From Paramoeba atlantica (taxonomy: Eukaryota; Protista; Discosea), in NCBI GenBank assembly GCA_977017575.1, contig CDRNVI010000004.1:248001-312000 (forward strand): a stretch of 64,000 nucleotides of DNA, in the 5' to 3' direction. Under the pieces are notes generated by a model that did no database searches, was not told the DNA's origin, and saw only the letters and a program-made list of their open reading frames with translations. Position numbers and translations under genes: made by a program. How positions within the stretch are numbered: the stretch's first letter is position 1; each line of letters starts with the position of its first letter. Positions 566-61,279 of the stretch are shown here, piece after piece.

Positions 566-3500
566 TTAGTGTTCAAGTCCTCCGAGCCACTGAATTGGTG
601 GAAAGTATTGTCGGAGTTGCGTGGCAATTGTGTACGCGTTCATCTTCTCTATTTCAAGTTGGAACGCTTCTTTGACATCCTTCACGTTTTGTTGTGACCG
701 TTGTGCGAGCGAGACAATGAGAGTTTTCGTGTTGTTGTGCAACTGTCCTAATTCGGTCATTGCCAAGCAGCTGAAACTTTCTTTCGGTATGCCCCCTTGT
801 ACAACGTATTTTTTGTGCTTGCGCTCAAGGGCATTTTGGATTAACTGCTCGACGGAGGTTTTGGCATAGCTCGGGGCACAACTGTGAACTACGGTGACAT
901 CGTAGAGAATTTCTCCGAGATGGGACCACATGATACCGAGATCAGGGCCTGATCGCATACGTCTTGCTCTGCATGGGTGATGTTCAGAGAGCTCTTCGGA
1001 TATGGTGGCCTTACATTTGGTGCAGAAGAATGATGAATGTACTCGAGGTTCTATAACATGGGGCACCCCTGCTTTGGCACACAATTCACCTAGGAAACAG
1101 ACTAATCGTGTGTGCTTCTTCGTTGCATTTATCCCACAGCATTGTGTACATCCAGGAATGTGCTGGAAGATGGTATCAGAAGAATATTCTGTCAGGCATC
1201 CCGGGCATACCACACTCTTAGGCATATTTTCTGGCACTATTCCCAGGCGCATCATTATACAGAAACGGAAGAGGTACGGATTGATGTAGTTGCTGGTTGA
1301 TTGCAGGTGGTGAAATGATGCGGATCCTCGCTCCATTAGTTCTTTGAGGCGCATGTCCTTTCTCAGCTCGGTTGCAAATCGTTTTTGTTCAGATCGTATT
1401 GCTTTCATGACTAATCGCTTGGAAGTATCATTCTTCTGGCTGTCACGTTCGTTCAGAGCCCTGTTTCGCTTGGATCCCGCTATGACCACCGGAGCGTTAT
1501 TGGTTTTGGATTGCTCTTCAATGGCTTTGCGAGACGCTTGGAAAAAGTGCTTTTGCTTCAAACATGACGGAGTAAGTCCGAGTCCGCCGAGATATTGCGG
1601 AAGTGTGGCGAGTTTTGCAGTAGGGCCCGTTGCATTAAACCAATGCTGAATACTGCCTACTTCCGCGTCGAACTGCTGGGCGATTTCAAGGGATGCTTCG
1701 GGCTTGTGTACTCGGAGGTGATAGTCTTGACGGGGGATGGTGCACCGATTCAGAATTGCGAGGGATAGGTTGCTCGGTCCCATGAGTCGAAGACGGCGAA
1801 AGAGACACTTGTGTTTGTCCATCTTTTTCTTTAGGCATTCACTTACCATCTCGTCCTGTCCGATATATGCACCTAGAATTTTCACTGTTTCTTGCGGGCA
1901 GGCTACCCCCATCGCTTGCAGAGTTTGGGGCGTCCATGGAGTGTCTGTTTTCTTGAACCATTCGCATTTCTGGAAGTTCATTTCCAGTCCCAGAAGTCGT
2001 GAAGATTCGTGCAGGTGTAGAAAGGCGGTCTGCAAGGATAGGGGATTTGTTGATGACAAGGTTATGTCGTCCATGTACGCTCGAACCGTTACATCTGGAA
2101 AGGACTCTTCGATTTCTTTGAGCGAATCCTGTATCAGGGCACAGAAGTATAGTGACGAAAGCGCTGAGCCCTGTCGAACGCCAGAAGTGCTCTTCACGAT
2201 CGAATGGAGCGAGTTATTGGCAAAGAAGAGCAGATCAGACGAGTCCCCGTACTCAAGATTAAAAATCCGCATGAAAGGTTTGAAGATGCCGTCTTTCTTG
2301 AGTGCTTCGAAGATTGCTTGACGCGTGGGGGTATTGTAGGCATTCTTATAATCGATCGCCAAGATGGCGTGTCCCTTGTCATATTCATCGAGCACCTCGT
2401 GAACAATTCCCTCGCACGCATTCTTTTGGAGGATCCCTCTTTGGACAGGCTGGAAAAATTTCTTCAGTTTCTCTTCGTTCCTGTTTAGAAGGATCGAGCC
2501 ACATACTTTCAATAGAGTCTCCCCAATTGCAATCGGTCGTATTCCGTTCTGCGGTTTGTTGATGGCCATTAGTCGACATCGTGTCAGTCTGTCACGCACC
2601 GACGATGCGATCTCCCCGTTCACTACATCGCGTAACATATGGCAGAGCGCGGTGCTGGATTCCTCGTCATCCGCAAGTAGGCGCAACATGGCTTCACTCA
2701 ATCCCGTAGGGCCCGGGGAAGCTCCCGGAGCCAGTTTCTCTATCGCGGCCCGAAGTTCGTGTTTTTCGATGATTCCTGTTCGGGGGTCTACGTCCGTCTG
2801 AGCTTGTGGGCGCTCTCCATCGGGATGTTAGTTAGTTAGTTATTATCCAGCCATTTGTCTGCGAACAGATGTGGCTGCCTCACTTCACGCGTAGGTCGCG
2901 TTGCCGGTGCTCCACGCGGGGAGTAATCTTCTAGCACGAGAGCGGTTGGCTCAATCATATAAGAAGACACCGGACTTTAGACAGACATTACCCTAGTTAT
3001 TTGATGCCTTGTTTTATTGGCATTGGGGAAATCCATCTATAGGAAAGGTGTAATGCCCTAGTTCTTTAGCATCTTGCTATTTTGATGCCGGGTACCTCCT
3101 TTCGTAAGCTTTCTAGTTCGCTTACATATTGTACGCATCTATACCAATATCGTATGTAATTCTGTATTGTTAGATAACGTTCCAACAAGGTACAGTCCAT
3201 CGGGATGTAGACTCTTGAGCTCCGCTACTTTCTCCTCAACGCTAAGGTTCGAGTCAAAATATACGTTGTCGAGGATACGCGTAGCTTTGCTTAGGTTACC
3301 AGCCCTAGCCGTTCGAAGCGCACTGCGGATTGATCGGCGGTCGACTTCACGTTCAAGTTTCTCGTCAGGTGAGGAGAACGCCGGCTCCTCGTTGCGCAAT
3401 TTGTTTGGCACATGATACTTCCGCTGGATCGCTTGTCGCACAGTGGTGAGTGAGTCGCGGGGTGCGTTTAGAAACTTGTGCCAGACGGATGTTTTCTCTG

Positions 3501-4545: not shown

Positions 4546-4561
4546 CAACAAGGTACAGAAA
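4546..4561 (-). other. Spliced-leader-like remnant TTTCTGTACCTTGTTG
   Basis: 14/16 match to kinetoplastid SL 3' end TTTCTGTACTTTATTG; also at 9442-9457, 18399-18414, 27356-27371, 60488-60502, 3183-3195, 8079-8091. Confidence 0.75.
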
Positions 4562-18368: not shown

Positions 18369-18414
18369 AAAAGAAAGAAAAGCAAAGTAGTAAAAATTCA
18401 ACAAGGTACAGAAA

Positions 18415-18823
18415 TAATAATAATAATAATAATAATATACCACTTTCTGACTAAGTGGCTAAGTGTTCGACTATTATGACAAAGAAATGTTGACATTATC
18501 TTTCGCTACTCCTAAATGCCGCTTACAACAGGAATGTAGACATGAGGCCTTATCACGGCACTTATGGCCGCATTCGGCCGTAGAATTTATAACTCTACAC
18601 GCTGTGGTTGAGGGATTCACTGGTTCACGCACGAGTTCGACTGCTGCCTCGTTCGCTAGTTTGTCCACGAGTTCATTCATAAAGTTTCCGCTATGAGCTC
18701 GAACTTTCACTACGAAAATCTTGTATTTCTTCAAAATCGAACGGGCCAAGCTGGAAATACGTTCAAGCAAATCTGCATTTTCCCAGTCTGCGTATTTACC
18801 CAACTGATACGGTACACGTACTT
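18415..18823 (-). pseudogene. RNase H C-half with (TAT)n tail
   Basis: ORF 18474-18803; joins in frame to 27372-27615 at aagtac. Confidence 0.88.
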
Positions 18824-19212
18824 CAAATAAAGGCGATAATCGTATGGACTAAACTGCAAATTCAATCATTCTTAATATTTCATATATTTCGTCTGAACTA
18901 TTACCTGACTTTCCGAGTTACGACTATATACGTTGACAACGCCTGCGTAGCGAAAACTACGAAATTCAGATGAAAAGCTGCCTCCAGTGACTTTACATTC
19001 TTTGCTTAATAAAATTCACAAGCTTAAGAACACACTTTTTATAAAGAACACACTTTTTATAAAGAACACCTACCAAGAATATAAAGAATGAATAATGAGT
19101 AAACTATTAAAACAAGCAAAATTCACTCCAAACAAACAAAATTCACTCCTTGGTTCCTCCTATTGTAAAGCATATTGAGAAAAGTACAGACATTAACAGC
19201 AGCAATACTCTC

Positions 19213-22200
19213 TTAACAAAAAGAAGGGTCTTAACAAAAAGAAGGGTCTTAACAAAAAGAAGGGTCTTAACAAAAGTCTTAACAAAAGCCCGTGGAGCGC
19301 ATATATTATATACGCGCCGATTACTATCAAATGTTCACATTCTAATAAACTAATATCCCTTTCTTTTCTTAAGAAGTATTTGAGATGACAAGCTTAAAAA
19401 CTCGTCTCAGTGTATTGGTCGTGAGCTAGAAACTGGCGGAGTTGAGCGTGGAGGATACTTCCTGCCTGTTCCTGGTGGAGTAGCGTAAATGTTTCCATTA
19501 CGCTGTGTCTCTCTAGCCCGCAACGGTCCGCAATAGCCCACAGGAGATTTCGAGTGGCGTTGTGCATGGAACCGCAGGACAGAACAGGGATACATTCAAA
19601 GCATTCCTTGTTTATCATGCCACTGTCAACATAGCGTACACGCTTGCGCTTTATCGCTTCGTTCATGAGGAATGTCGTATTGTGTTTGATATTCGAGGGA
19701 GCCAGTTCGTGAACTACTGTGAGGTCGTAGTATTTCTCTCCTGAAGCCCATTGAATTGCGAGGTCGGGGCCCGTGCGACGCAGAGTACTTCCAACACATG
19801 TCCTGGCATGTTCCGTTTTGTTTTCAGGGTGGATCGTGGCTGCGCACGCAGAGCACTCATAGTAACTGAACTGACGAGGTTCACGTTCACACGGCAAGCC
19901 AGCTCGGAGGCATAGCTCGTAAAGGTAGCGAACAAGGGCATGATGCTTCGTAGTTACATTGTGTCCTGCACATTTGACGCATCCAGGTATGTGGGTTAGC
20001 GCTTCCGAGGAGCTTAGCAGCTTTTTGCATCCCGGGCATAGCAACGAGTTTGGCAGTTGTGGGTGGCTTATTTTTAGTCGTGACATGATGTTTAGCGTGT
20101 AGATGTGCGAAGGAATGATTTTGCGATTCCCGATAGGCCATTCATAGCTCCCTTTCTTGCTGCAAGCTTTAATCGTCGGAGCCCACTCCTTGTTTTTGAG
20201 AAGATTTGTCTGGATTTCTGTGGCTCTTTTGGTCTCCGTCACCACCTCGTCCTCAGGTGTCTTATGTGATTCCTCCAACGTCCCTGCAGGTGCTGGCGGT
20301 TCCATGCGCTGTGCCATCCGAGCTGAAAAGGATTTTTGATGCTCAAAAACGGCATGTCGCGATGAAGTGTACGCAGCGTTCCGCAAGGGTTCTGTTGCTG
20401 GAATACCCAATCCACCTTTCTTTAAAGGTAGTCTTGCTATCATTTCTTGCTCTGGACTCAGAGGTCCCAACCACGATGTGACGACATTCTTGATCTCGTG
20501 GTCAAATTTTTGCGCTAGCTCAAGTGAGGCCTCTGGTTTATGTACCCGTACGTGATAACGGTGCCGAACGTTTACGCTGCGCGATAGCAAAAGCAGGGAC
20601 GCGTTGTTGGCACCCATCTTTTTAAGACGTCTGAATATCGTATGGTGTTTTTCCAGCGTTCGGATTAATTCGGATCCTATGCGCTGTTCCTCCCCAACGA
20701 ATGCACCCAGTACTTTAATGACTTCGCTCTCTGTACGCACACCTTCTTCTTTGAGTGTTGATGGAATGGGGGCGTCGCTTTTCCCTTCAAACCAGATGCA
20801 TTTTTCGTTATTGAGTTGAATTCCTTCAGTGAGAAGCAGGGTTTGTAACCGGTGGTATGCCGCCTCGACCTCTTTTCCACTAGGAGAAGTGAGGCTGACG
20901 TCGTCGACGTAAGCTAGAACTTTGACGTTTGGAAATTCCTGCGCTATGGTCTCCAACATGGGTTGCAGAAAGCAGCAAAAGAAAACCGTCGACAGTGGGG
21001 AGCCTTGACGAACACCTGCATTGCTCTCAAGTACGCTGTACAATGTACCGGTATGTCCGTAAAAAAGAAGTTCTGAGGCTTCTTTGTATTGCGCCGCAAA
21101 CACTCTTTGAAAGGGCTTCATTGTGGCGAAACCAAAGACTGCTTTTGCTATTTCGTCACGGGATGGAACGTTGAATGCGTTGCGAAAGTCGAGCGATAAA
21201 ATGACGTGGCCTTGCTCATATAGATCACTGAGATTATGTATTACGCTTTCACAACCGGATTTGGATAACACTCCTTGTTGAAGGGGCTGGAATAAGGTAG
21301 CGAGCGATGATTCGTGTCGAAGTAATAGGACGAGTTCAGCGAGTTTTAGTAGTGTTTCTCCCATGGCGATTGGACGAACTCCTCCATTTGGCTTTGGAAT
21401 AGCCACCAATCGAGCTCTTTTCAATCGTCGCATAATGTCGGTAGGCAGCACCCCGTTGACCAGATCCACTAGCATGTGGCACAAGCTTCTGCAGCATATT
21501 TCGTCGTCGATTAGCAGGCGGAGAATGACGTCATTCATCCCGGTCGGACCTGGAGATGAACCTTTGGCCAACCGGCGACCAGCAAGTCGAAGTTCCTCGG
21601 GCGATATGCAAGCCATTGCCGGCGCATCGGGTGGCAACGTGAAGGTGCAAGGATGCTTTGGATGTAGTTTCTCCAATTTTTCCAGAATTTCCTGATCTGA
21701 CGCACTTGTTGTGATCATTTCCCGGTCTAAAATTTTAGTAGCCCTGGATGTCGCACCCTCCTTTACTAGCCGCATTGCTTTCTTAATGGCTCGATTGTCA
21801 CCGTTTTCTTCGTGGGTCTTGTTGGTATCGTTGCGTGATCGAAAAGGGCGATTCCTGCGTCTTCTTTCTGATTCGGCCCGTACGGTCGCCAATGAGAACT
21901 TGACTGCCGATAGCAACTTATGCCATATCTGGTTTTTGAGCTTTTGCGGACTATCCGCGTATTCACGTATGAGGTCTCTGAAAATTGAAATGACACATGG
22001 AATGAATTCGGTTTCAATGGTTTTTGTCGTGGGAAGTGGTTCAAAGTCAAGGTCTTCTTGCGTGTGGCTGGCATTGCTTGCATGAAATACTGGTTCATCC
22101 GATGTTTCATTTTCACCTTCCCACACTAAACGGAAAATTCGTACATTAGGTGGCGGTGGTAAGGTTCCATTGTACTTTTTCCCTCGACAGTGTCCATGTA

Positions 22201-23389
22201 TCCCTTCGTATTCCAGATTAACTTGTCCTGATCCCTTTCTTACTTTAGTCTTGGTGACGATTCCTTGTGATATGTTAATAGCCGTTTGTCGATCGAAAGT
22301 CCAAGCAACGACGCAGCGCTGACCTACCTTGCTTTTGCATGCCATTTTCCAGATGATGTCAGGGGGAATAGGGAATTGGGTAGTCGGGTTGATCTCGGCG
22401 AGCATTTCTTCCGCAAAGTTGGCCTGGGTCGTCGAGTTATCGTCTACGTTTCCTTGTTCACTCACGCAATCGGGTAGCGCATCGATCGGATCGGGCGATT
22501 CGTATCGAGGTGTTGAACGCGGTGTTGATATACAATCGTGGTAAATGCGCTGCTCATTCGTCGGTGATTCCGGGTTGTTTCTTTCTTGGAGCGTTTGGTT
22601 TTTACCTTCACCTACAGCCTCTGCACGGTCTTCCGATTCGTCACTATGATTTTCATCTCTCCGATGCCATTCTGCACCTCCCAGCGGGACAAGATTCGAG
22701 AAGCCGCCGTTCGGATAGCCGACAGCCTCGCACGACTTCCTGGATCCAAAGCGCGATCCACACAAAATTGTGTCTGCTGACCCTTCTGGCGGAAAACAAA
22801 ATCTTTTCTTCCGCTGGTTATTCCGCGAAATGCTTGTTCTCGTTTCTCCGCCTTCTTCGTTGTACAGATTCCTTGTGGGCAACTCGGTTGGGCGGGTATC
22901 GATTGAGCCGGTTATTTCCTTGCGGCGACTGAACAAGCTGGACAGCAGGCCTGTTGACAATAGGTTAGCGCTTTTGATTGTTACAGAGCATTTGTTTCCT
23001 GCAGTTGACGGGGGGCCCACTCGCGGGGGAATCGACCCGGTGCACGTTTCAGAAGCTGTTTCGGAGCTTTGATTCGGAGCCTCCTCCACCGAATTCTTAG
23101 CCTTATCCTTTTTCTGTCGCAGTGCCTCATGGAATTCCCAGCGCATTTGTTTGCGTTCCTTCCTCTTTAGGAAAATCTCTTCGTCGGAGAGTATCCGCGC
23201 AGTGGGATTCAAAGGTCGAAGAACAATGTCGTCGATAGGTACCTCTACTTCTTCGGCTCGTACCGCTACACGTGGTGAGTGTGACACTTGTGTTTGTAGT
23301 GGCGGTGGTGGTGGCGGTGGTGATTGTAGTGGTAGAAGCTCTGATTGTGGGGGCGACGTTGGCGATGGTGGCTGTTTTGGTGGCGGTGG

Positions 23390-23420
<31 letters not shown>

Positions 23421-23630
23421 GGCGGCAGCGGCGGCGGCGGCGGCGGCCGTGGTGGTGAATCTTCGGGTGGCGCTGGTGGTATTGGCGGCAACGTCGGCAT
23501 CTCTTTCTTTTTCCGTCGCGTCGTGGGAAGCGATTGGACAACGGGAGCTACCCCCGTGTCCTTCGCCTTGGCACGCGTTAGCATGCCCATTTCGAATAAA
23601 AGATTAATATAATCAACAACAAGAGTGAGC
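19213..23630 (-). mobile_element. Family B copy 2
   Basis: Identical translation to copy 1; ctctc TSD 19208-19212 / 23631-23635. Confidence 0.9.
19394..23590 (-). CDS. Family B polyprotein, 1398 aa
   Basis: Same protein as 10437-14633. Confidence 0.93.
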
Positions 23631-23752
23631 CTCTCCGTGAGCTCTTTATCTGAAATAAGTTAATATCAACTTAGATCATGAGATGATATCAACGTAGATG
23701 ACGGGGGATTTTATCAAATCGAATAGAGGTTGTAAGTGAAAGGAAATTCTGA

Positions 23753-26700
23753 TTAGTGTTCAAGTCCTCCGAGCCACTGAATTGGTGGAAAGTATTGTCG
23801 GAGTTGCGTGGCAATTGTGTACGCGTTCATCTTCTCTATTTCAAGTTGGAACGCTTCTTTGACATCCTTCACGTTTTGTTGTGACCGTTGTGCGAGCGAG
23901 ACAATGAGAGTTTTCGTGTTGTTGTGCAACTGTCCTAATTCGGTCATTGCCAAGCAGCTGAAACTTTCTTTCGGTATGCCCCCTTGTACAACGTATTTTT
24001 TGTGCTTGCGCTCAAGGGCATTTTGGATTAACTGCTCGACGGAGGTTTTGGCATAGCTCGGGGCACAACTGTGAACTACGGTGACATCGTAGAGAATTTC
24101 TCCGAGATGGGACCACATGATACCGAGATCAGGGCCTGATCGCATACGTCTTGCTCTGCATGGGTGATGTTCAGAGAGCTCTTCGGATATGGTGGCCTTA
24201 CATTTGGTGCAGAAGAATGATGAATGTACTCGAGGTTCTATAACATGGGGCACCCCTGCTTTGGCACACAATTCACCTAGGAAACGGACTAATCGTGTGT
24301 GCTTCTTCGTTGCATTTATCCCACAGCATTGTGTACATCCAGGAATGTGCTGGAAGATGGTATCAGAAGAATATTCTGTCAGGCATCCCGGGCATACCAC
24401 ACTCTTAGGCATATTTTCTGGCACTATTCCCAGGCGCATCATTATACAGAAACGGAAGAGGTACGGATTGATGTAGTTGCTGGTTGATTGCAGGTGGTGA
24501 AATGATGCGGATCCTCGCTCCATTAGTTCTTTGAGGCGCATGTCCTTTCTCAGCTCGGTTGCAAATCGTTTTTGTTCAGATCGTATTGCTTTCATGACTA
24601 ATCGCTTGGAAGTATCATTCTTCTGGCTGTCACGTTCGTTCAGAGCCCTGTTTCGCTTGGATCCCGCTATGACCACCGGAGCGTTATTGGTTTTGGATTG
24701 CTCTTCAATGGCTTTGCGAGACGCTTGGAAAAAGTGCTTTTGCTTCAAACATGACGGAGTAAGTCCGAGTCCGCCGAGATATTGCGGAAGTGTGGCGAGT
24801 TTTGCAGTAGGGCCCGTTGCATTAAACCAATGCTGAATAATACTGCCTACTTCCGCGTCGAACTGCTGGGCGATTTCAAGGGATGCTTCGGGCTTGTGTA
24901 CTCGGAGGTGATAGTCTTGACGGGGGATGGCGCACCGATTCAGAATTGCGAGGGATAGGTTGCTCGGTCCCATGAGTCGAAGACGGCGAAAGAGACACTT
25001 GTGTTTGTCCATCTTTTTCTTTAGGCATTCACTTACCATCTCGTCCTGTCCGATATATGCACCTAGAATTTTCACTGTTTCTTGCGGGCAGGCTACCCCC
25101 ATCGCTTGCAGAGTTTGGGGCGTCCATGGAGTGTCTGTTTTCTTGAACCATTCGCATTTCTGGAAGTTCATTTCCAGTCCCAGAAGTCGTGAAGATTCGT
25201 GCAGGTGTAGAAAGGCGGTCTGCAAGGATAGGGGATTTGTTGATGACAAGGTTATGTCGTCCATGTACGCTCGAACCGTTACATCTGGAAAGGACTCTTC
25301 GATTTCTTTGAGCGAATCCTGTATCAGGGCACAGAAGTATAGTGACGAAAGCGCTGAGCCCTGTCGAACGCCAGAAGTGCTCTTCACGATCGAATGGAGC
25401 GAGTTATTGGCAAAGAAGAGCAGATCAGACGAGTCCCCGTACTCAAGATTAAAAATCCGCATGAAAGGTTTGAAGATGCCGTCTTTCTTGAGTGCTTCGA
25501 AGATTGCTTGACGCGTGGGGGTATTGTAGGCATTCTTATAATCGATCGCCAAGATGGCGTGTCCCTTGTCATATTCATCGAGCAGCTCGTGAACAATTCC
25601 CTCGCACGCATTCTTTTGGAGGATCCCTCTTTGGACAGGCTGGAAAAATTTCTTCAGTTTCTCTTCGTTCCTGTTTAGAAGGATCGAGCCACATACTTTC
25701 AATAGAGTCTCCCCAATTGCAATCGGTCGTATTCCGTTCTGCGGTTTGTTGATGGCCATTAGTCGACATCGTGTCAGTCTGTCACGCACCGACGATGCGA
25801 TCTCCCCGTTCACTACATCGCGTAACATATGGCAGAGCGCGGTGCTGGATTCCTCGTCATCCGCAAGTAGGCGCAACATGGCTTCACTCAATCCCGTAGG
25901 GCCCGGGGAAGCTCCCGGAGCCAGTTTCTCTATCGCGGCCCGAAGTTCGTGTTTTTCGATGATTCCTGTTCGGGGGTCTGCGTCCGTCTGAGCTTGTGGG
26001 CGCTCTCCATCGGGATGTAGACTCTTGAGCTCCGCTACTTTCTCCTCAACGCTAAGGTTCGAGTCAAAATATACGTTGTCGAGGATACGCGTAGCTTTGC
26101 TTAGGTTACCAGCCCTAGCCGTTCGAAGCGCACTGCGGATTGATCGGCGGTCGACTTCACGTTCAAGTTTCTCGTCAGGTGAGGAGAACGCCGGCTCCTC
26201 GTTGCGCAATTTGTTTGGCACATGATACTTCCGCTGGATCGCTTGTCGCACAGTGGTGAGTGAGTCGCGGGGTGCGTTTAGAAACTTGTGCCAGACGGAT
26301 GTTTTCTCTGTTATAAGCTTGAGCGTGGGATATCCTCGCAGGATTGATCTAAAGATTGCTATGACGTGAGCGGCAAACGTGGGGTCGATGTGGGCGAGTG
26401 GGGGAAGAGGCTCCAAGTCGCATCCCGTGTCACAATCTTGTGTTTCTTCGATATCCAAAAATGGCGTTTGTGTCACAATACGGTTGAGCTTTACCACCCG
26501 TAATCGGAAGATGTTAATCTTGTGAGATGCAGGTAGATATAGAAATCCTGATGGACCTGGCTGATGCTGCGGTGTGTAGGAAATCTTTACCCTGATTGCA
26601 CCTTTTCTAGAATGTCGCGTAACAACTTCTCCAATCGACTGATAAATCTCACTGCTGTGGCGGAATTTCCAATGTAGCTCGCAAGTAGTTCCTTTTCCCC

Positions 26701-27325
26701 AGTCGTTGATTATCTTTAGTATTTGGTCCGGAGCTTTCATTGTTTCTTCGGCGACCTCGGCCACCCGATCGTCCTCCGAGATGTCTGATCCTGATGCAGA
26801 TGAGCTCTCCGATCCTTCGTCATGTGACATGTCCGCTTGTCCGAGGTTCGCCTTCGTTAGATCAGAGCTACGGAGTATCACTTTTACCTTTTTCGGAGTT
26901 TTCTTCAGTCGTGTCTCTTTTCTGATCTTAATTTTCAAGGATGACTCTCCAGTTTGACTTCTTCGTAGAATTTCATTTCTCCGAACACTGGCAAAAGCGG
27001 TTTCCTCGTCTTTCGTGTTGTGGCGGCCGTGGTCTGACGTTGGGTTTTTCTCGATGCTTTGCGCTTTGTGTTCCATCTTCTTTTGCCAGTTGAGGGGAAT
27101 ATGCTGTGGAATGGGGGTTGTGTACATGAGGTCGTCGTACGTGCTAGCGTCTTGGATGAGTTTCTTGTTTGCCTCAAACTGGTCCCATGATCCAATCTCG
27201 TGTCTATTCGCTTGTTCCGTAAAGTTCAAGTTGTGCTCCTTTACGCCAGTGGACCTCACTGCTGCAGTGTTCTGCTGCTGATGCGACGGCGTGCCTTGCG
27301 CCGCCCTCGGGGGAGGTTCTGACAT
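23753..27325 (-). CDS. Family A polyprotein, 1190 aa
   Basis: Same protein as 14796-18368. Confidence 0.93.
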   Translation of the reverse strand: MSEPPPRAAQGTPSHQQQNTAAVRSTGVKEHNLNFTEQANRHEIGSWDQFEANKKLIQDASTYDDLMYTTPIPQHIPLNWQKKMEHKAQSIEKNPTSDHGRHNTKDEETAFASVRRNEILRRSQTGESSLKIKIRKETRLKKTPKKVKVILRSSDLTKANLGQADMSHDEGSESSSASGSDISEDDRVAEVAEETMKAPDQILKIINDWGKGTTCELHWKFRHSSEIYQSIGEVVTRHSRKGAIRVKISYTPQHQPGPSGFLYLPASHKINIFRLRVVKLNRIVTQTPFLDIEETQDCDTGCDLEPLPPLAHIDPTFAAHVIAIFRSILRGYPTLKLITEKTSVWHKFLNAPRDSLTTVRQAIQRKYHVPNKLRNEEPAFSSPDEKLEREVDRRSIRSALRTARAGNLSKATRILDNVYFDSNLSVEEKVAELKSLHPDGERPQAQTDADPRTGIIEKHELRAAIEKLAPGASPGPTGLSEAMLRLLADDEESSTALCHMLRDVVNGEIASSVRDRLTRCRLMAINKPQNGIRPIAIGETLLKVCGSILLNRNEEKLKKFFQPVQRGILQKNACEGIVHELLDEYDKGHAILAIDYKNAYNTPTRQAIFEALKKDGIFKPFMRIFNLEYGDSSDLLFFANNSLHSIVKSTSGVRQGSALSSLYFCALIQDSLKEIEESFPDVTVRAYMDDITLSSTNPLSLQTAFLHLHESSRLLGLEMNFQKCEWFKKTDTPWTPQTLQAMGVACPQETVKILGAYIGQDEMVSECLKKKMDKHKCLFRRLRLMGPSNLSLAILNRCAIPRQDYHLRVHKPEASLEIAQQFDAEVGSIIQHWFNATGPTAKLATLPQYLGGLGLTPSCLKQKHFFQASRKAIEEQSKTNNAPVVIAGSKRNRALNERDSQKNDTSKRLVMKAIRSEQKRFATELRKDMRLKELMERGSASFHHLQSTSNYINPYLFRFCIMMRLGIVPENMPKSVVCPGCLTEYSSDTIFQHIPGCTQCCGINATKKHTRLVRFLGELCAKAGVPHVIEPRVHSSFFCTKCKATISEELSEHHPCRARRMRSGPDLGIMWSHLGEILYDVTVVHSCAPSYAKTSVEQLIQNALERKHKKYVVQGGIPKESFSCLAMTELGQLHNNTKTLIVSLAQRSQQNVKDVKEAFQLEIEKMNAYTIATQLRQYFPPIQWLGGLEH

Positions 27326-27371
27326 AAAAGAAAGAAAAGCAAAGTAGTAAAAATTCAACAAGGTACAGAAA

Positions 27372-27624
27372 GTACTTTGTGCCAAAAGTTCCAGACGTAC
27401 TCCGAATCGACATGCACAACGAAGGATTCTTGCTTACCCTCCCCGATTTGCAGTGCAAGAAAAAATGCGTGAAGCTCTGATCTGATGGATGTGGCGTCCG
27501 CCTTTTGCAATGATTGTTTCTTCGAAAAGGCAACATACCCGTTCTGTGCCACAGCTACCGCAGCTCCCGCGACTATTTGGTTGAATTTACGTTGTGATGA
27601 CCCATCACAATACATGTGCAAGAG
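27372..27624 (-). pseudogene. RNase H N-half
   Basis: LHMYCDGSS..RSELHA..VHVDSEYV carries the first three catalytic acidic residues (D, E, D). Confidence 0.88.
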
Positions 27625-30600
27625 TCACTCACTCACTCACTCTACACTAACTCCATAGAGTTAGTTAAGTATTTATCTATATTCATTCTTAAATTTCCTC
27701 ATATTACTTTCGAGCAACTTATTTTTCAAGTGGAAATTTCCCCCCAATACCTTCCCCACTGCATACAGCTCAGTGATCGCTTGCCCTGGTAGGTGGCCGC
27801 ATTTCGTGGTTTCTAGCGGGGGCGACGCTTTGCTTGAGCTGTTTGATTCCCGTCCCGTAGACTACCGCGGCGACAATTGGCACTGGTGTTAGAGATCCTT
27901 GCTACCTCTGGCATGCCAGGCTCGGAAAGGAGATCAGGATTTTGACCTTCGCTTGTCGCGGCGGAGGTTTTGCGCTTTTTCTTCGAAGAGTTGCGTGAAA
28001 GAGCTGCTTTGGCTATTAAATCGCACTTCTCGTTGTAAATATTTCCGCAGTGACCTTTCACCTTAAAAACAAAAAGCTGCACACTACGCGCTTCTAAGCC
28101 TCGAAAAGCGTGTTCCAGATCCAAATATATATCGCTATTTGGAAGGCCTTCAAAACCAATCAAATAATACTTTTTTCTAATCACATTTGACAAATGCCAA
28201 ACTACCCAGGAATCCGTATGCAGTATGATTCTTTCCCTATCTTGTGGTGCCCTTTGTATGGCTGTTAGTGCCGCATATAGTTCCGCCCTCTCCGGCGAGC
28301 CGCAGCCTAAAGTTTCCTTGCAAATGGCAAAGCTTGACACTTCCTTCCCACATTGTACTTCAACCATTCCCAGCCCCATTTTCCCAATAAACCCAGAACT
28401 CACCGATGCATCAGAATAAATATGTAAAGCACCTTCGTCGATTATAAATGGCGTGGTGCCTTCCTCCGCATACTGAAGATCCGATAAATTGGTATCCCGA
28501 AGTGCTGTTGAGGTAACCTTATGCCAACCTTTTCCCCGATAGCTCACGTATGTTTTCTTGCGCCCAAGGCTAGCTTGCAGATTCTCAACTTGGGTCTGCC
28601 AATATTTTCGATCCCCTGCATAGACCAATGCTTGTTCAATCATGATCCCCATATCGCCCATGCAGGCTTCAGAAGGAGAATGAATCCTGCTTTTTTCTTT
28701 AACGTTCCACTGCACAAGCTCGGAATATATCTCCGAATGTCTTATCAGGTGCCCTAGAAGTCGTGCCCGGTTTACCTTATGTAGTGTGGAGAATGATGGT
28801 GTGTCAACGTAAAGGGCTGTAAGAGGTATACTTTTCCCACGGTGGTCCAATTTTGGGCAACGACATATGATGCGACGCATTTTGTTTACCTGAATGTCTA
28901 CCCAATTTAACGTTTTATCCGTCAATACAAGAGTACCTGAGTTATAGTTCAGAACGGGGTAAACCAGTGTATCGAAAAGGCGAAGTTTAGTTTTCACAGA
29001 TAGTGGTGATATCCATATTCCTTGAAATTTTGAGAAGCTTGCCCAGGTAAGCCGCACCCTGTCCCTAATGCACGCCTTGGGGTCCTGTTCATGAAAAAGG
29101 TGCCCTAGGTAACGGTAACTCTCGACGTGTGGAACCTTTCCCAATGTATCGGATATTATTTCTTCGATGTTGTTATTTTTTCCTATGCTCATCCAGGCGG
29201 TTTTGGTGGGCCCAACAGCAATCTTTAAATTCGCAGCAAGGGCTTGCTCTGCTGTATCTTCCATCATGCTTTGCAAGTCTTCCTTGTCGCTCCCAAATAG
29301 GAGCAAATCGTCAGCATAATTCAGATCAGTGAGCCGCGTTTCCCGTAACCCTCTGCTCCTCGTACCCTTGGATGATAATAAGATGCCGTGGGGTTTTGAA
29401 TCTATTGCCTTAAATAATATTCGATCCAGGACCATAACAAAGAGGTACGGTGCGAGAACGTCGCCCTGTAGAATTCCTGTCGTGATGGGGAAAGCTTCCG
29501 TTAGCCCATACGGTGTACGAACGACGCCTCTCATATTGCGATAGACCGACATAATCATTTCTACTAACTTGGGGCCAATGTGGAATGCTACCAGAGATGC
29601 CCTGATAGCATCAAACGAAACAGATGGAAAAGCCTTTGCAAAATCCACGAAACCAATGTTGAGCCCATTTTCCCGCAAAGCTTTAACTCTTGCTTCGTTG
29701 AGAATCGCCTGGGCTTGAGTTGTTGAGCGATCTGGTCGAAACCCATATTGATTCTCGCGAAGCATGGGCTCCACATAAGGTCTCATTCGTTGCAAGATTA
29801 AACTGTTCATTAGTTTGACGATGCAATTCACTAAGCAAATAGGTCGCCAGTTCTTAAGAAGACTCAAATCACCCTTTTTTGGTATAGGAACTTGTAAGAC
29901 ATCACCCCAAACATCCGGAGCCATCCCGGTATCGTGAACTCTGTTTATGACACATAGCAGCCAATCTCGAAGTAACTCGTTACCAGCTATGCATTTCAAG
30001 GCTTCCATTGGGATTTCGTCTTTTCCTGGCGATTTTCCTTTACCAAAGTGTGAGATGCCAATTTGAAGCTCATCTTCCGTAAAAGTGGAGTCGTTAATCG
30101 TGTTAGGGGATGGTTTGGCCTCAGGAAATTTTATATTCGTGTCCCCCCCGGCGTCTCCCGCAAAGGCTTCGAAGAATGATTTGATTTCCGCCAGCTTTTG
30201 TTTATTACAGGTCCCTGAAATCTTAAAATCGGCGCGATGAACTCCACATATTTCTTTCAGAGCTCTCCATGGGCTGGAATGATTCTTCTTTAGTTTAGTT
30301 TCCAGGACATCACATGATTTGGCTATTGCTTCCTCTATTGGCACCTGTGTTTGTAAAACCAATTCATTGAAGTCCTTGTGTTTTCTGCTTAGCTCAAAGA
30401 TTCTGCGCAAATAACCAGTTTCGGTTCCTTCGAGCGTTTCCATTGGCGAATCGATTTCAAGAGATATTTTGTTTTGTGGTTTCGGAATTTCCCTGCCAGA
30501 CGATCGAAGGCAAGAGGCAAGAAGATCCCAGGAAGGGAAATCCTTGTTGTGCAGTTCGCCTTTGACATGATCGCAGATTCGTTTGTTAAATTTTTCACTA

Positions 30601-32058
30601 TGTTCTGGGTTAGAAAGTTGAAGCCAGGGAATCTTATTTCTGTGGGTATTTGTGGAAACTTTCCATTTGATCTTGATCTCGGCTCTCACCAGAAAGTGTA
30701 CAGTTGGTGTTGGTGCGCCAAAAACTTGATGTTTATGTAGGGCAGACGCAAAGCGCGAACACACTGCAATGTGATCGAGCTGTCGCTTAGCATCGTTCGG
30801 CAGTATACATGTATATTTACGGCGGCTTGGGCATAAGATGTGCCCCGATTTACAATTTATTCCTTCTAAAAGGCCTTCTAATCTTTCCATTGATAGCGCG
30901 TCCTCTTCTGTCTTATTTTTAAAAGTGAGCGGTGCATTCAAATCTCCAAGGAGAAGAGCTGGCCGTCGTGAATATTTACCAACTGCGTCATGAAACGCAG
31001 TGGTGAGAGAAATGTCAAACTCTTCCATTGCATCTTGTGAAGAATCGCGCGTCGGCCCATATACATTCATGATAAAGGCCGACCCCCCTTCTATAGTAAA
31101 CTCGGCCCCCATGATCCTGTCACTCACCTTCCAAACCTTCAAAAACGGATGCTGAGAGATAAACCCCATACCGTTGTACCCATTCACCGCCGACAAAAGG
31201 TAGATGAAAAAGTGTTTATCTCCGTACCGTAGTTGCCTGCGCAAAATGTCAGACCCACCGCTAGAAGTAAAAGAGAATCTTGTTTCCTGTAAAGCCAGAA
31301 CATGCAAATCTTTCTGAGCCATATATCGCAATGTTTCATGTAATCGGGAGGATGCTTTCAGTCTGAAAACGTCGTCGCCCTTAAGTTTCAACGAAGTCGT
31401 GTTAAGAGTTCCTATAGATAAATACTTCCTCACAGCAGACCTTTCAGGGTCGTTGTCGCGAAGAGCATGCTTGCCACACAGTGCCCTATTTTTCCGTACT
31501 TTCTTTCGGGTATTCGAACGTCGAGGTTTCCGAATTCGCACCCCACACAGCACTATACGTGGGTCATACGGCGGGAAAGGAAGCGTTTCCGATCGCCGGT
31601 AGTATTTCACCCGCCAGCGACCTAGCTGAAAGAGAGACCCATAACCTCTCTGTGTAACATCCCCCCTCCAAACCCGATACTCCGCAGCCCCCGCATATCG
31701 CCAGCACAGCGCGATGCAGTCGCCAGGACGAAGAATTTTACATATTCTCATCACAGTACGCAGGCGAAGTTTAGCATGTCCATCAAAATCCAAAGTTGGT
31801 TCAAAATTCGTCGTGTATTTTTTTTGTTTTCTGTTTTTACAGTCTGCCTTCTTTTTCTATTCCGTAAAAAAAACGCCTTCAAATATCTTTTTTTTTTACT
31901 TTTTGTATGTCTTCATATCACACATATTCATCATTTTGCACGTGCCTCCTTCTAAAAAAAAGCAAAAAGGACACCCCGACCTAACGTGGACCGTACTAGA
32001 AGATTCACTATACTCTTCTCGCAAGGCCCGGACGCCTTCGCCATAATTTTGAAGAATA
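27625..32058 (-). mobile_element. Ingi-like LINE (APE-RT-RNase H)
   Basis: Single long ORF; (GTGA)n tail at 27625-27642; 5' limit approximate; candidate trans-splice acceptor (pyrimidine tract plus AG) at ~31952. Confidence 0.82.
27813..31793 (-). CDS. APE endonuclease / reverse transcriptase / RNase H polyprotein, ~1326 aa
   Basis: TLNTTSL, LQETR, NVYGPT, GDLNA, LDHI (APE); NWRPICL, QYGFRP, DFAKAF, QGDVLAP, YADD (RT); YSDAS, AEL, HTDS, VKGH..NEKCD (RNase H). True start may be ATG ~31751. Confidence 0.92.
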   Translation of the reverse strand: MDFDGHAKLRLRTVMRICKILRPGDCIALCWRYAGAAEYRVWRGDVTQRGYGSLFQLGRWRVKYYRRSETLPFPPYDPRIVLCGVRIRKPRRSNTRKKVRKNRALCGKHALRDNDPERSAVRKYLSIGTLNTTSLKLKGDDVFRLKASSRLHETLRYMAQKDLHVLALQETRFSFTSSGGSDILRRQLRYGDKHFFIYLLSAVNGYNGMGFISQHPFLKVWKVSDRIMGAEFTIEGGSAFIMNVYGPTRDSSQDAMEEFDISLTTAFHDAVGKYSRRPALLLGDLNAPLTFKNKTEEDALSMERLEGLLEGINCKSGHILCPSRRKYTCILPNDAKRQLDHIAVCSRFASALHKHQVFGAPTPTVHFLVRAEIKIKWKVSTNTHRNKIPWLQLSNPEHSEKFNKRICDHVKGELHNKDFPSWDLLASCLRSSGREIPKPQNKISLEIDSPMETLEGTETGYLRRIFELSRKHKDFNELVLQTQVPIEEAIAKSCDVLETKLKKNHSSPWRALKEICGVHRADFKISGTCNKQKLAEIKSFFEAFAGDAGGDTNIKFPEAKPSPNTINDSTFTEDELQIGISHFGKGKSPGKDEIPMEALKCIAGNELLRDWLLCVINRVHDTGMAPDVWGDVLQVPIPKKGDLSLLKNWRPICLVNCIVKLMNSLILQRMRPYVEPMLRENQYGFRPDRSTTQAQAILNEARVKALRENGLNIGFVDFAKAFPSVSFDAIRASLVAFHIGPKLVEMIMSVYRNMRGVVRTPYGLTEAFPITTGILQGDVLAPYLFVMVLDRILFKAIDSKPHGILLSSKGTRSRGLRETRLTDLNYADDLLLFGSDKEDLQSMMEDTAEQALAANLKIAVGPTKTAWMSIGKNNNIEEIISDTLGKVPHVESYRYLGHLFHEQDPKACIRDRVRLTWASFSKFQGIWISPLSVKTKLRLFDTLVYPVLNYNSGTLVLTDKTLNWVDIQVNKMRRIICRCPKLDHRGKSIPLTALYVDTPSFSTLHKVNRARLLGHLIRHSEIYSELVQWNVKEKSRIHSPSEACMGDMGIMIEQALVYAGDRKYWQTQVENLQASLGRKKTYVSYRGKGWHKVTSTALRDTNLSDLQYAEEGTTPFIIDEGALHIYSDASVSSGFIGKMGLGMVEVQCGKEVSSFAICKETLGCGSPERAELYAALTAIQRAPQDRERIILHTDSWVVWHLSNVIRKKYYLIGFEGLPNSDIYLDLEHAFRGLEARSVQLFVFKVKGHCGNIYNEKCDLIAKAALSRNSSKKKRKTSAATSEGQNPDLLSEPGMPEVARISNTSANCRRGSLRDGNQTAQAKRRPR

Positions 32059-59257: not shown

Positions 59258-59805
59258 TTTTTTTTTTTTTTTTTTTTTTTTTTGCATATTCAAATCATTC
59301 TAAATACAAGCGTACAATACCCGCCGGCCATTTATCGGCGTATAAATCCCTTCGAACAATTCTATTTCCGTATGTTTCGTTTCCCTCTTCTTGAATCGTT
59401 TACTTCCATACATGTATGAATACGGTTTTTTTTTTCTTAATAAAAACACAGGTCTTAATAAAAACAAAGGTCTTAACAAAAACAAAGATCATCTAATCCA
59501 TCCGGTTTTAGGTTGTAGTTTGTTTGCTCGTTGCTTTTTTTTGAGGTATTATTTACAGATTTTTAGGGAATAATTTACCGCATGATTGTTTTGGACTTTA
59601 GGCGTTGTTGTTGCTGTTGGAATTGACGTGGACTTGTGCATATATATATACCATATGTATATTGCATAAAAACGAATCTCTCACTATTATTATTTTGCGG
59701 TATGTTCTTTTAGTTGCAACTTTACGCAGAGAAAATAAGCGGTCTTGACACGGGTTCTTTTTGCGAACTTTATTTTTCAATGGCTGAGGCCTCCTATGTT
59801 CTTTT
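59258..59805 (-). other. AT-rich poly(A)-tailed retroposed segment of unknown origin
   Basis: Ends ..TATGC(A)n; holds 18-bp repeat variants at ~59437-59488; inside the ataggat TSD. Confidence 0.55.
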
Positions 59806-60212
59806 ATAGGATCACTCACCCGTTGTCCACCCGGCATACGTGCTTGAACCTTGACGAAACTGAGATCGTAATAGCTTATATCCGGGAAAGGAAACGAATA
59901 TTCAATGTCAGGGTCATCGTCCCATCGCGCTTTAATCTCACTGTTCGGATCTTTTGGATTCTTAAAGTAGACACGACCTGTAACCGTGTATCGATCCTGG
60001 TCCCCTCGCTCCGACCACACTGCTTGAACGAAGACGCGATAACCTCGTGAGAGTAGTAAATTGGTTTTATCTGCAAATTCTCGCAAAGCTTCTTCGGACA
60101 ACGGAACGGCATGGCCACCGCCTTGCAGAATCGCCTCAACCTGGCCAGGGTTGAGTGTCTGCTGGTGATCACTCGGCGCGGCCGGATCAGGACTGATCGC
60201 TCTGGCCGTCAT
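59806..60212 (-). pseudogene. YR2 gag N-half
   Basis: ATG 60212 at the edge of repeat A1; joins 55565 in frame (RVSDPIQSEV) at atcctat. Confidence 0.85.
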
Positions 60213-60416
60213 CGCACACTAATAAAAATAACTTGTAAGAGAATGTAAGCTATAAAACTATACACAATCTACATAAAGTTATAATTTAAATCATATTAAA
60301 AGATATAATAGAATTCATAATCAGAGATTATGTGCCTCGTAGGGCCATTCGAGAAAAAGGAGTCTTTTCAAATTCGTATTTCTTCTCGTCTAAATTTCCT
60401 CTCGTAAACTATCAGA

Positions 60417-60503
60417 GTCGTCTGTTGAAGAGAAATGCTGTGAGAAGTGGACATGACAATAATCGTTTAACGAAAAAAAAAATAAGTCAACAAGGTACAG
60501 AAT
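60417..60503 (-). other. 5' end of family D: SL remnant, UTR, first 13 codons
   Basis: MSTSHSISLQQTT continues into LAHLDQKE at 41210 through core TCT. Confidence 0.82.
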
Positions 60504-60897
60504 GGTCTTCAAAAAAACAAAGGTCTTCAAAAAAACAAAGGTCTTCAAAAAAACAAAGGTCTTCAAAAAAACAAAGGTCTTCAAAAAAAAAACAAAGGTC
60601 TTCAAAAAAACAAAGGTCTTCAAAAAAACAAAGGTCTTCAAAAAAACAAAGGTCTTCAAAAAAACAAAGGTCTTCAAAAAAACAAAGGTCTTCAAAAAAA
60701 CAAGTCTTCAAAAAAACAAAGGTCTTCAAAAAAACAAAGGTCTTCAAAAAAACAAAGGTCTTCAAAAAAACAAAGGTCTTCAAAAAAACAAAGGTCTTCA
60801 AAAAAACAAAGGTCTTCAAAAAAACAAAGGTCTTCAAAAAAAAAACAAAGGTCTTCAAAAAAACAAAGGTCTTCAAAAAAACTAAGGTCTTCAAAAA
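60504..60897. repeat. 18-bp minisatellite (GGTCTTCAAAAAAACAAA), ~21-22 units
   Basis: Read directly; a few units vary in A-run length. Confidence 0.95.
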
Positions 60898-61279
60898 GAA
60901 ATCCACGCCGAGGGGCTCCCTGGAAACATATACACTGATAACATGTATGAATAAATGAACAACTATGAATAGCTCAATCGTAATTCAAAATGACACAACA
61001 TATCATTCATTCATTTCACACGCACAAAGATGGAAAAGAAACAAGCCTGCATAAAACAACACAATGAAATCAGCGTCTTCTTTCTCACACATAATGAACA
61101 AGAATAAATAAAATGAAACCAATTCCTAAATCATGTAATATCTTTCTTCATAAAGCCATTCAAAGAATTCAACTGCTTTAGTATCCTCACCACCTATCCA
61201 TGAAAAGAAATTAAGGTACCTGGCCATTTCAATCAAACTTACAGTATTTGAAACAAATCCACAACAAACTCCTTTACTT

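What the first reader, a model, noticed from the sequence alone, without database searches (positions are those of the whole stretch)
27356..27371. Spliced-leader remnants written into DNA at the 5' ends of unrelated retroelements
Seen: (TTT)CTGTACCTTGTTG heads all four A copies, element D (60488-60502) and the 367-bp insert (3183-3195, 8079-8091). Each family has a different downstream sequence (AATTTT.., ACTTAT.., GAACGT..) and none has a GT donor. At 27371, 60503 and 3195 it abuts the target duplication, with one extra base at 60503. Known: kinetoplastid SL exons end TTTCTGTACT(A/T)TATTG. Inference: these copies were reverse-transcribed from trans-spliced RNAs and reveal this host's variant SL end. 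All stop within 13-16 nt of the junction, suggesting a fixed RT stop (a modified base or a short SL). B and E/F may keep a shorter (C)TTGTTG remnant.
Basis: partly seen in the sequence, partly recalled or inferred. Interest (0 to 1): 0.8.

Follow-up and report, generated by a model that had tools for sequence, protein, structure and literature searches.

The report
Spliced-leader stubs heading retroelement copies
Several unrelated jumping-gene copies here begin with the last 13-16 bases of the cell's own spliced leader, which marks them as DNA copies of trans-spliced RNA; about a third of the roughly 1,100 leader copies in this genome end in that same short stretch, for a reason still unknown.

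Summary
CTGTACCTTGTTG occurs 7 times in the window, all on the minus strand (0.05 expected by chance). Each copy sits at the 5' tip of a retroelement: four copies of A, element D, and two copies of a 367-bp insert.

The motif is the 3' end of the host's 38/39-nt spliced-leader (SL) exon. I found the real SL RNA gene: exon, then GT, in a tandem 1454-bp repeat that also holds 5S rRNA. The genome holds 1,104 copies of the 13-mer.

The first 24 nt of the insert occur at four other loci, each directly after CTAG. So the leader was joined at an AG acceptor, as trans-splicing does.

The "short SL" idea is refuted. A "universal fixed RT stop" is only partly right. Relic lengths have three modes: about 16 nt (13-19 nt: 361 copies), about 27-28 nt (one SINE-like family) and near full length (at least 34 nt: 396 copies). 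Why one mode sits at 16 nt is unresolved.

Nested relic arrays, such as [full SL][16][10], resemble the leader recycling known in dinoflagellates.

No RNA data were available. This scan has already reported SL-headed retroelements on other pieces of this genome; the relic-length spectrum, the nested arrays and the AG-junction test are the additions here.

The parts
27356..27371 (-). 16-nt SL relic (TTTCTGTACCTTGTTG) at the 5' tip of the first A copy of the array. It abuts the 3' end of a 255-bp repeated segment (27372-27626).
   Evidence: Assembled contigs of three public runs break exactly at 27371 and continue into at least 3 different flanks, none of them the SL 5' half.
18399..18414 (-). 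16-nt SL relic heading an A copy, directly after the (ATT)n tail of the preceding A. The same junction is at 9442-9457 and 4546-4561.
60488..60502 (-). 15-nt SL relic heading element D.
   Evidence: Two other D-type heads in the genome carry 16-nt relics.
3183..3195 (-). 13-nt SL relic heading the 367-bp insert (second copy at 8079-8091).
2829..3195 (-). 367-bp chimeric retrocopy made of a 13-nt relic, 24 nt of a 5'UTR-like piece, the 3' part of a longer element, and a (TAAC)n tail. It is flanked by the 13-bp duplication ACATCCCGATGGA (3196-3208 and 2816-2828). The duplicate copy is at 7725-8091.
23631..27371 (-). Element A, 5' part: relic, T-rich 5'UTR, and an ORF with RT plus CCHC plus a PD..D..K endonuclease (R2/CRE type). 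Its 3'UTR and (ATT)n tail continue at 18415-19212, after the B insertion.
19213..23630 (-). Element B (R2/CRE-type, 1398-aa ORF) inserted in A's 3'UTR. Its head is ..CTCTTGTTGTTG (a possible relic of 7 nt or less) and its tail is made of 18-nt repeats.
59426..60502 (-). Element D, non-autonomous: relic, 5'UTR with the TTCGTTAAACGATTA motif, a 204-aa ORF with no family match, and a tail of 18-nt repeats plus A10.
60503..60900 (-). 18-nt minisatellite (GAAGACCTTTGTTTTTTT)n. D's head sits directly after it.
27372..27640 (-). 255-bp repeated segment, preceded by the (GTGA)n tail of the endonuclease/phosphatase-type LINE C (ORF 27813-31793). Together they form a head-to-tail chain upstream of A.

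Best explanation
The motif is the 3' end of this kinetoplastid-type host's own spliced leader. It was written into DNA because the RNAs that were reverse-transcribed into these copies had been trans-spliced. That applies to the R2/CRE-type elements A and B, the non-autonomous D, and a chimeric 367-bp retrocopy. Shown: the motif is identical to the SL exon end of a real SL RNA gene; the sequence diverges exactly at the exon/intron boundary; the relic sits at the 5' terminus inside the target duplication; and the source sequence has an AG exactly at the junction. Inferred: reverse transcription, or transfer of the cDNA 3' end to the target, often ends early. It ends most often just after copying the UUU run at -16..-14, at the border between the pyrimidine-rich 3' third of the SL and its purine-rich 5' part (..ACAG|UUUCUG..). 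This gives relics of 13-19 nt with a mode at 16. Other events run on to the cap region, mostly ending at C3. My preferred cause is dissociation or template transfer at the weak rU:dA stretch, possibly helped by a protein or structure on the 5' part. I hold this only at about 35-40% of the weight among causes. An RT-blocking feature at G-17/A-18 is the main alternative. DNA-encoded leaders can be trans-spliced again at their internal AG. Together with RT slippage on the TG..TG repeat, this builds nested arrays such as [full SL][16][10].
For: SL identity: there are 1,104 genomic copies of the 13-mer against 0 for the reversed control. The SL RNA gene has the exon followed by GTATGAGAAGC, a 1454-bp tandem unit holding 5S rRNA, and a classic stem I pairing exon nt 21-32 with the intron. 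Retroposition: a 13-bp target duplication encloses the relic; tails are (TAAC)n, (ATT)n and 18-mer repeats; A and B have RT plus CCHC plus PD..D..K. Trans-splicing: the insert's first 24 nt occur at 4 other loci, each directly preceded by CTAG. Preferred end: counts by length are 58/83/114/106/55/292/396 for 13/14-15/16/17-19/20-23/24-33/at least 34 nt. At least 12 families have 15-16-nt relics. In the A family the outermost relic is 15-19 nt in 13 of 16 distinct heads, and new outer layers are again 17-19 nt. Re-splicing at the internal AG: 14 direct [..CTTGTTG][TTTCTG..] arrays against 0 for the control, and [full][16][10] seen three times.
Against: There is no RNA evidence. No public RNA run holds the stretch, and the runs I laid are contigs, probably DNA. 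So the 5' ends of A and D transcripts are unknown, and the SL has not been shown on mRNAs directly. The cause of the 16-nt mode is untested. Relic length is typical of each family, which also fits inheritance from master copies. Some abutments, such as [14][15] and [8][12][10], cannot come from an AG acceptor. The AG-junction test rests on one repeated source motif, so it counts as about one independent observation.
Confidence: 0.85

Rival explanations
1. The reverse transcriptase adds the leader by template jumping, not by trans-splicing of the element RNA. On reaching a 5' end it jumps onto the 3' end of a free SL exon (the trans-splicing intermediate) and copies 7-38 nt of it. Repeated jumps give the relic arrays.
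For: Relic arrays have 0-6-nt spacers (AA, GG, AAAC, CCTCTA), like the non-templated additions made at jumps. Some abutments cannot be AG-derived, such as [14][15] and [8][12][10]. Presumed parent copies carrying those spacers are absent from the assembly. Poly(A) runs sit directly before full SLs, which suggests serial jumping. The elements are R2-type, and R2 reverse transcriptases are known for end-to-end jumping (my own knowledge).
Against: The insert's SL junction coincides with an AG in the source sequence. The free SL exon is a rare intermediate. The 14 [relic][16] arrays fit use of the internal AG as an acceptor.
Confidence: 0.15
2. The 16-nt relic is an inherited, functional 5' module (a transcription start, promoter or translation element) that each family keeps. 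It is not a stop made anew at each retroposition.
For: Relic length is typical of each family, and the relic is perfectly conserved while the neighbouring 5'UTRs differ. Assembled contigs all end A at exactly 27371. For dinoflagellates it has been proposed that SL relics carry a promoter-like TTT(G) motif (PMC6050394).
Against: My searches required exact relics, which biases toward apparent conservation. The A family also shows heads of [17][8], [10][7], [18][10] and [full][7]. Outer relic layers were newly added and are again 15-19 nt. Related families carry full leaders, for example L005, L006 and L022, which share A's GSWDQF motif.
Confidence: 0.2
3. The relics are target-site remnants. CRE/SLACS-like elements insert into SL sequences and leave the downstream 16 nt attached to the resident element.
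For: A and B belong to the R2/CRE type, whose trypanosomatid members target SL genes (PMC12278014). In the window, three of the four independent relic heads abut the 3' end of another element.
Against: Orphan SL 5' halves are absent: the pattern TTAACGATAAAGATACAG followed by any base other than T occurs once in 45.7 Mb, and no SL 5' half is in the window. The relic lies inside the target duplication. No intron sequence follows the relics. Most 16-nt relics elsewhere have ordinary flanks.
Confidence: 0.03
4. A modified nucleotide at SL position -17/-18 blocks reverse transcription.
For: The mode is sharp at 16 nt, with a trough at 20-23 nt. By analogy, the 'full-length' class ends at C3, just before the cap-proximal A residues that are hypermodified in trypanosomatids, often with a T in place of A2 (the cap4 chemistry is from my own knowledge).
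Against: Copies that read through number 743 (at least 20 nt) and are perfect at these positions. Substitution or skipping of G-17 is not enriched: CA+H+16 gives 11 against about 7 expected, and CA+16 gives 10 against about 13 expected. No such modification is known in trypanosomatid SLs, where only cap4 and a pseudouridine at position 28 are described (my own knowledge).
Confidence: 0.2

Closest known systems
Relict spliced leaders of dinoflagellate retrogenes ('recycling of processed cDNAs'; Slamovits and Keeling 2008, reviewed in PMC6050394 and PMC5585692)
   Same: The SL is written into DNA at the 5' end of retroposed copies. Truncated relics stack in tandem beneath a newer leader. An AG inside the DNA-encoded leader is re-used as an acceptor.
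   Different: The lineage is different (Euglenozoa, with a 38/39-nt leader). The tagged units here are mainly autonomous and non-autonomous retrotransposons, not host genes. The outermost relic is itself often cut to about 16 nt. There are 10-nt slippage repeats. Three length modes are seen.
CRE-clade retrotransposons of trypanosomatids (SLACS, CZAR, CRE1/2; PMC12278014)
   Same: The protein architecture matches: RT plus a C-terminal CCHC and a restriction-like endonuclease. Both have a link to the spliced leader.
   Different: Those elements insert into SL RNA genes at one fixed position in the exon. The elements here lie outside SL genes and carry the 3' end of the exon as their own first bases, a mark made at the RNA level.
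Pr77 hallmark of ingi/L1Tc/NARTc/SIDER elements (PMC1874656, PMC8190864)
   Same: A short 5' sequence is shared by otherwise different kinetoplastid retroposons.
   Different: Pr77 is an element-encoded promoter that gives unspliced transcripts. The motif here is host SL sequence acquired through splicing, and its length varies.
Chimeric retrocopies made by LINE template switching (for example U6-L1 chimeras; my own knowledge)
   Same: The 367-bp insert joins the 5' end of one RNA (SL plus 24 nt) to the 3' part of another element within a single target duplication.
   Different: The 5' partner here is a trans-spliced mRNA end, not a small nuclear RNA.

Membership tests
Host spliced-leader exon sequence | Identical to the exon of a real SL RNA gene, with the boundary at the exon/GT junction | tested here: met
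   L036/L037 carry the exon ..CAGTTTCTGTACCTTGTTG followed by GTATGAGAAGC. The units are tandem, 1454 bp, with 5S rRNA. Stem I pairs the exon with the intron. The relics diverge exactly after ..TTG.
Host spliced-leader exon sequence | Found at the 5' ends of mRNAs | not testable with these tools
   No RNA run holds the stretch. The runs I laid are contigs, probably DNA.
Retroposed copy made by target-primed reverse transcription | Target-site duplication, a 3' tail, and a variable 5' end | tested here: met
   A 13-bp duplication flanks the 367-bp insert. Tails are (TAAC)n, (ATT)n and 18-mer repeats plus A10. 5' relics range from 7 to 38 nt.
Trans-spliced template | The SL is joined directly 3' of an AG in the source sequence | tested here: met
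   The 24-mer that follows the relic in the insert is preceded by CTAG at 4 other loci. These are homologous copies, so this is about one independent observation.
Dinoflagellate-type leader recycling | Tandem relics in which the inner one is truncated at an internal AG of the leader | tested here: met
   There are 14 [..CTTGTTG][TTTCTGTACCTTGTTG] arrays against 0 for the control. [full][16][10] is seen three times. Other arrays cannot be explained by an AG.
CRE/SLACS/CZAR site-specific elements | RT plus a restriction-like endonuclease | tested here: met
   A and B have RVT_1, best PDB matches to R2 proteins, and CCHC plus GPDL..YD.TVVH..K.
CRE/SLACS/CZAR site-specific elements | Insertion inside an SL RNA gene exon at a fixed position | tested here: not met
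   The window has no SL 5' half and no SL intron. Genome-wide there is only 1 orphan SL 5' half cut at this point.

The most novel reading that the evidence does not exclude
In this kinetoplastid, retrotransposons routinely propagate through trans-spliced mRNAs, and stacked leader relics record successive rounds of copying, a convergence with dinoflagellates. The discrete end at leader position -16/-17 would then reveal a so-far unknown feature of the SL on mRNA, such as a modified base, a bound protein, or a programmed point where the element's enzyme leaves the RNA. That feature would limit or steer retroposition.
Probability: 0.25. Interest if true: 0.8.

Novelty: new variant of a known kind. 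Interest (0 to 1): 0.62.

Why it matters
In genomes transcribed as long polycistrons, it is unclear how a retrotransposon obtains a defined, translatable 5' end. These copies show that host trans-splicing supplies that end, and that the leader is then carried back into DNA. The leader tag marks retroposed DNA unambiguously. It counts rounds of copying through the nested relics. It also exposes where reverse transcription ends on a natural capped RNA: at the cap region and at -16. In my searches of the held literature I found this reported only for dinoflagellate retrogenes, not for kinetoplastid mobile elements. The relic-length spectrum gives a concrete handle for experiments on SL structure or modification and on the behaviour of R2/CRE-type enzymes.

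Tried and rejected
- **Insertion into DNA-encoded leaders as the source of 16-nt stubs:** rejected. Orphan SL 5' halves are essentially absent: one in the genome and none in the window.
- **A read-error signature of a modified G at -17:** not found. Substitution gives 11 against about 7 expected, and skipping gives 10 against about 13 expected. An apparent 'ACA-TTT' excess in my first 24 loci did not hold genome-wide.
- **Extra G's from cap copying before the 16-nt relic:** not enriched. The exact-17 class is 33 TG, 10 GG and 4 CG, and 14 of the TG cases are relic-relic junctions.
- **Parent copies of the spacer-containing double relics (CCTCTA, AAAC):** none exist in the assembly.
- **RNA evidence:** no RNA run holds the stretch. 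The one possible RNA run gave no coverage. The other runs are contigs that only confirm the element borders.
- **Target duplications claimed at 27371 and 60503:** not verifiable.
- **Relic length determined by RT clade:** rejected. A-like and B-like families include both full-leader and 16-nt heads.
- **Literature search for the 13-mer:** it returned only an unrelated paper.
- **Rfam:** the only matches reaching a family's own threshold in the SL repeat were 5S rRNA; no spliced-leader family matched.

Full report
**Observation.** CTGTACCTTGTTG occurs seven times in the window, always on the minus strand, against 0.05 expected. On that strand it is followed by three unrelated sequences:
- AATTTTTACTAC.. 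at four copies of element A;
- ACTTATTTTT.. at element D;
- GAACGTTATC.. at two copies of a 367-bp insert.

None of these starts with GT. Matching the upstream bases to the leader gives relics of 16 nt (A), 15 nt (D) and 13 nt (insert).

**Independent events.** A self-comparison shows that 1-27371 is a tandem array of A units that are 99.6-100% identical. The window therefore holds four independent junctions, not seven:
- A after a 255-bp repeated segment (27371);
- A after the (ATT)n tail of another A;
- D after an 18-nt minisatellite;
- the insert, inside A's ORF.

The insert (2829-3195) is bounded by a perfect 13-bp duplication, ACATCCCGATGGA, and the relic lies inside it, against the upstream copy. 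The far end of the A array, fetched as L073, is truncated, and I see no duplication around D.

**What the motif is.** The window's genome (45.7 Mb, 248 contigs) holds 1,104 exact copies of the 13-mer, against 0 for the reversed control. In most fetched loci the motif is preceded by (A)ACTTTAACGATAAAGATACAGTTT. That gives a 38/39-nt unit followed by many different T-rich leaders and an ATG.

Searching for the unit followed by GT found real SL RNA genes at contig C3, 780.7 and 782.2 kb. There the exon is followed by GTATGAGAAGCTTCG.., in a 1454-bp tandem unit that also carries 5S rRNA on the other strand. In the predicted fold, exon nt 21-32 pair with the start of the intron, which is the classic stem I, and two more hairpins follow. 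The host has an SL RNA gene whose exon ends ..TTTCTGTACCTTGTTG, a variant of the kinetoplastid ..TTTCTGTACT(A/T)TATTG (that consensus is from my own knowledge).

**The elements.**
- A (23631-27371, with its 3'UTR and (ATT)n tail at 18415-19212) and B (19213-23630, inserted in A's 3'UTR) each encode a reverse transcriptase. Their best solved relatives are R2 proteins. Both have a C-terminal CCHC knuckle and a GPDL..YD.TVVH..K endonuclease motif, which is the R2/CRE type.
- D (about 59426-60502) is non-autonomous. Its tail of 18-nt repeats resembles B's.
- The 367-bp insert exists only in this array. It is chimeric: a 13-nt relic, then 24 nt, then the 3' part of a longer element that elsewhere continues upstream with different sequence.

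**Test of trans-splicing.** The 24 nt that follow the relic in the insert (GAACGTTATCTAACAATACAGAAT) occur at four other loci, and in each they are directly preceded by ..CTAG. The leader was therefore joined exactly 3' of an AG, as trans-splicing requires. The four loci are copies of one repeated motif, so this counts as roughly one independent observation. It is, however, made on the window's own element.

**Was there a fixed stop?** I counted leader lengths by exact extension from the exon end:

| Relic length (nt) | Copies |
|---|---|
| 13 | 58 |
| 14-15 | 83 |
| 16 | 114 |
| 17-19 | 106 |
| 20-23 | 55 |
| 24-33 | 292 |
| 34 or more | 396 |

These come and sum to 1,104.
- The leader is not short, and most copies pass position -16.
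- There is nonetheless a distinct hump at 13-19 nt (361 copies) with its mode at 16, followed by a trough.
- A second mode at 27-28 nt belongs mostly to one SINE-like family, GTACATTTTGCTAGCCC...
- The 'full' class mostly starts at C3 of the leader, often with a T where A2 should be. That fits a stop at the cap-proximal residues that are hypermodified in trypanosomatids (my own knowledge).

**Is the 16-nt end inherited or made anew?** In 65 distinct sites, relic length is typical of each family. A and at least eight other families have 15-16 nt. This sample is partly biased, because 30 of the loci were fetched with the 16-nt pattern.

I then fetched all detectable A heads. The outermost relic is 15-19 nt in 13 of 16 distinct heads. 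Layered heads also exist: [17][8], [10][7], [18][10], [19]AA[16] and [36][7]. D-type heads have 16, 16 and 15 nt. Families sharing A's N-terminal GSWDQF motif carry full leaders. B-like families show 36, 36, 16 and 7 nt or less.

The end near -16 is therefore produced repeatedly and is not a property of one RT clade.

**Nested relics.**
- Fourteen loci have a leader end directly followed by TTTCTGTACCTTGTTG.
- Three have [full SL][16][10]. That is what results if a DNA-encoded leader is transcribed and trans-spliced again at its internal ..ACAG|TTT.. This matches the dinoflagellate 'recycling' pattern (PMC6050394).
- The 10-nt unit TACCTTGTTG repeats with period 10 after ..TTG. It is best read as slippage between the TG..TG repeats.
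- Other arrays cannot come from AG acceptors: [14][15][10], [8][12][10], and spacers such as AA, GG, AAAC and CCTCTA. The presumed parents of two such arrays are absent from the assembly. Template jumping by the reverse transcriptase therefore also contributes.

**Causes of the -16 end that I could test.**
- Insertion of other elements into DNA-encoded leaders is excluded. An SL 5' half not followed by T occurs once in the genome and never in the window.
- A modified G at -17 leaves no substitution or skipping signature.
- Cap-derived extra G's are not enriched.

What remains is an early end or transfer of the cDNA just after the UUU run, at the border between the pyrimidine-rich and purine-rich parts of the leader. 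The cause could be the weak rU:dA hybrid, a structure or protein on the 5' part, or a modification that gives no read errors. I favour the first, but only weakly.

**RNA and reads.** No public RNA run holds the stretch. Contigs of three runs, probably DNA, break exactly at 27371 and 23631. At 27371 they continue into at least three different flanks, none of them the leader's 5' half. This confirms that A ends at the 16-nt relic in several genomic contexts. It says nothing about transcripts.

**Comparison and novelty.** The closest known phenomenon is the relict leader of dinoflagellate retrogenes. The closest element family is the CRE clade. A and B do not meet that clade's defining feature, insertion into SL genes. 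My literature searches found no report of leader-headed retrotransposons in kinetoplastids.

Earlier follow-ups of this scan reported the same phenomenon on other pieces of this genome. The additions here are:
- the SL gene anatomy;
- the AG-junction test;
- the genome-wide length spectrum;
- the nested-array catalogue;
- the exclusion of the insertion model.

**Verdict.** This is a real feature: a new variant of a known kind, of moderate to high interest. Its truncation mechanism is still open.

Noticed in passing
window 1-64000: All 27 ORFs of 200 aa or more lie on the minus strand; those with a family match are RT, RNase H-like, zinc-knuckle or transposase pieces. In the stretches I read, elements sit head-to-tail with no spacer: (GTGA)n tail, then the 255-bp segment, then A-(ATT)n, then A. 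This looks like a one-orientation retroelement train, perhaps because sense orientation within a polycistron is needed for expression.
   Followed up: partly
window 36633-37700 (-): A 355-aa ORF matches the ISXO2-like DDE transposase domain (PF12762, E 2e-14). It lies between two RT fragments, so a Merlin/IS1595-like DNA transposon may be nested in a retroelement.
   Followed up: no
window 60503-60900; also L060, L075, L148: 18-nt minisatellites (GAAGACCTTTGTTTTTTT and relatives) form the tails of B- and D-type elements. In either orientation they are also the sequence directly upstream of several relic-headed copies, which suggests insertion targeted to these tails.
   Followed up: partly
L031-L042 (12 loci fetched's pattern, whose genome-wide count of 189 also includes the real SL genes): A dispersed SINE-like family starts with SL nt 12-38, followed by GTACATTTTGCTAGCCC.. 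and a long perfect hairpin (CCCGGAAACGGGCAT..ATGCCCGTTTCCGG). Its start, near SL nt 11-12, is close to the fixed position where CRE/SLACS/CZAR elements cut SL genes in trypanosomatids (nt 11/12, from my own knowledge).
   Followed up: partly
L005, L006, L018, L019, L022, L028, L131, L135: Full-length leaders are often directly preceded by 10-22 A's, sometimes with a T replacing leader A2. This fits jumping from a cap to another RNA's poly(A) tail, or insertion into A-runs. The T may be a misreading of a modified cap-proximal A.
   Followed up: no
L064 (G000:C11, about 274.1 kb): A retroposed SL RNA fragment: the leader (with two substitutions), 12 nt of the true intron (GTATGAGAAGCT) and then an A-run. 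The unspliced SL RNA itself was therefore also copied back into DNA.
   Followed up: no
L007, L012, L014-L016: Partial SL 5' pieces (CTTTAACGATA, CTTTAACGATAAAG) lie just upstream of a full leader. This is a different kind of leader duplication, not explained by the 3'-relic scheme.
   Followed up: no
window 26978-27187 (-): A's N-terminal region gives a weak LsmAD match (E 0.007, below Pfam's threshold). It contains a GSWDQF motif shared with several other leader-headed families (L005, L006, L019, L022).
   Followed up: partly
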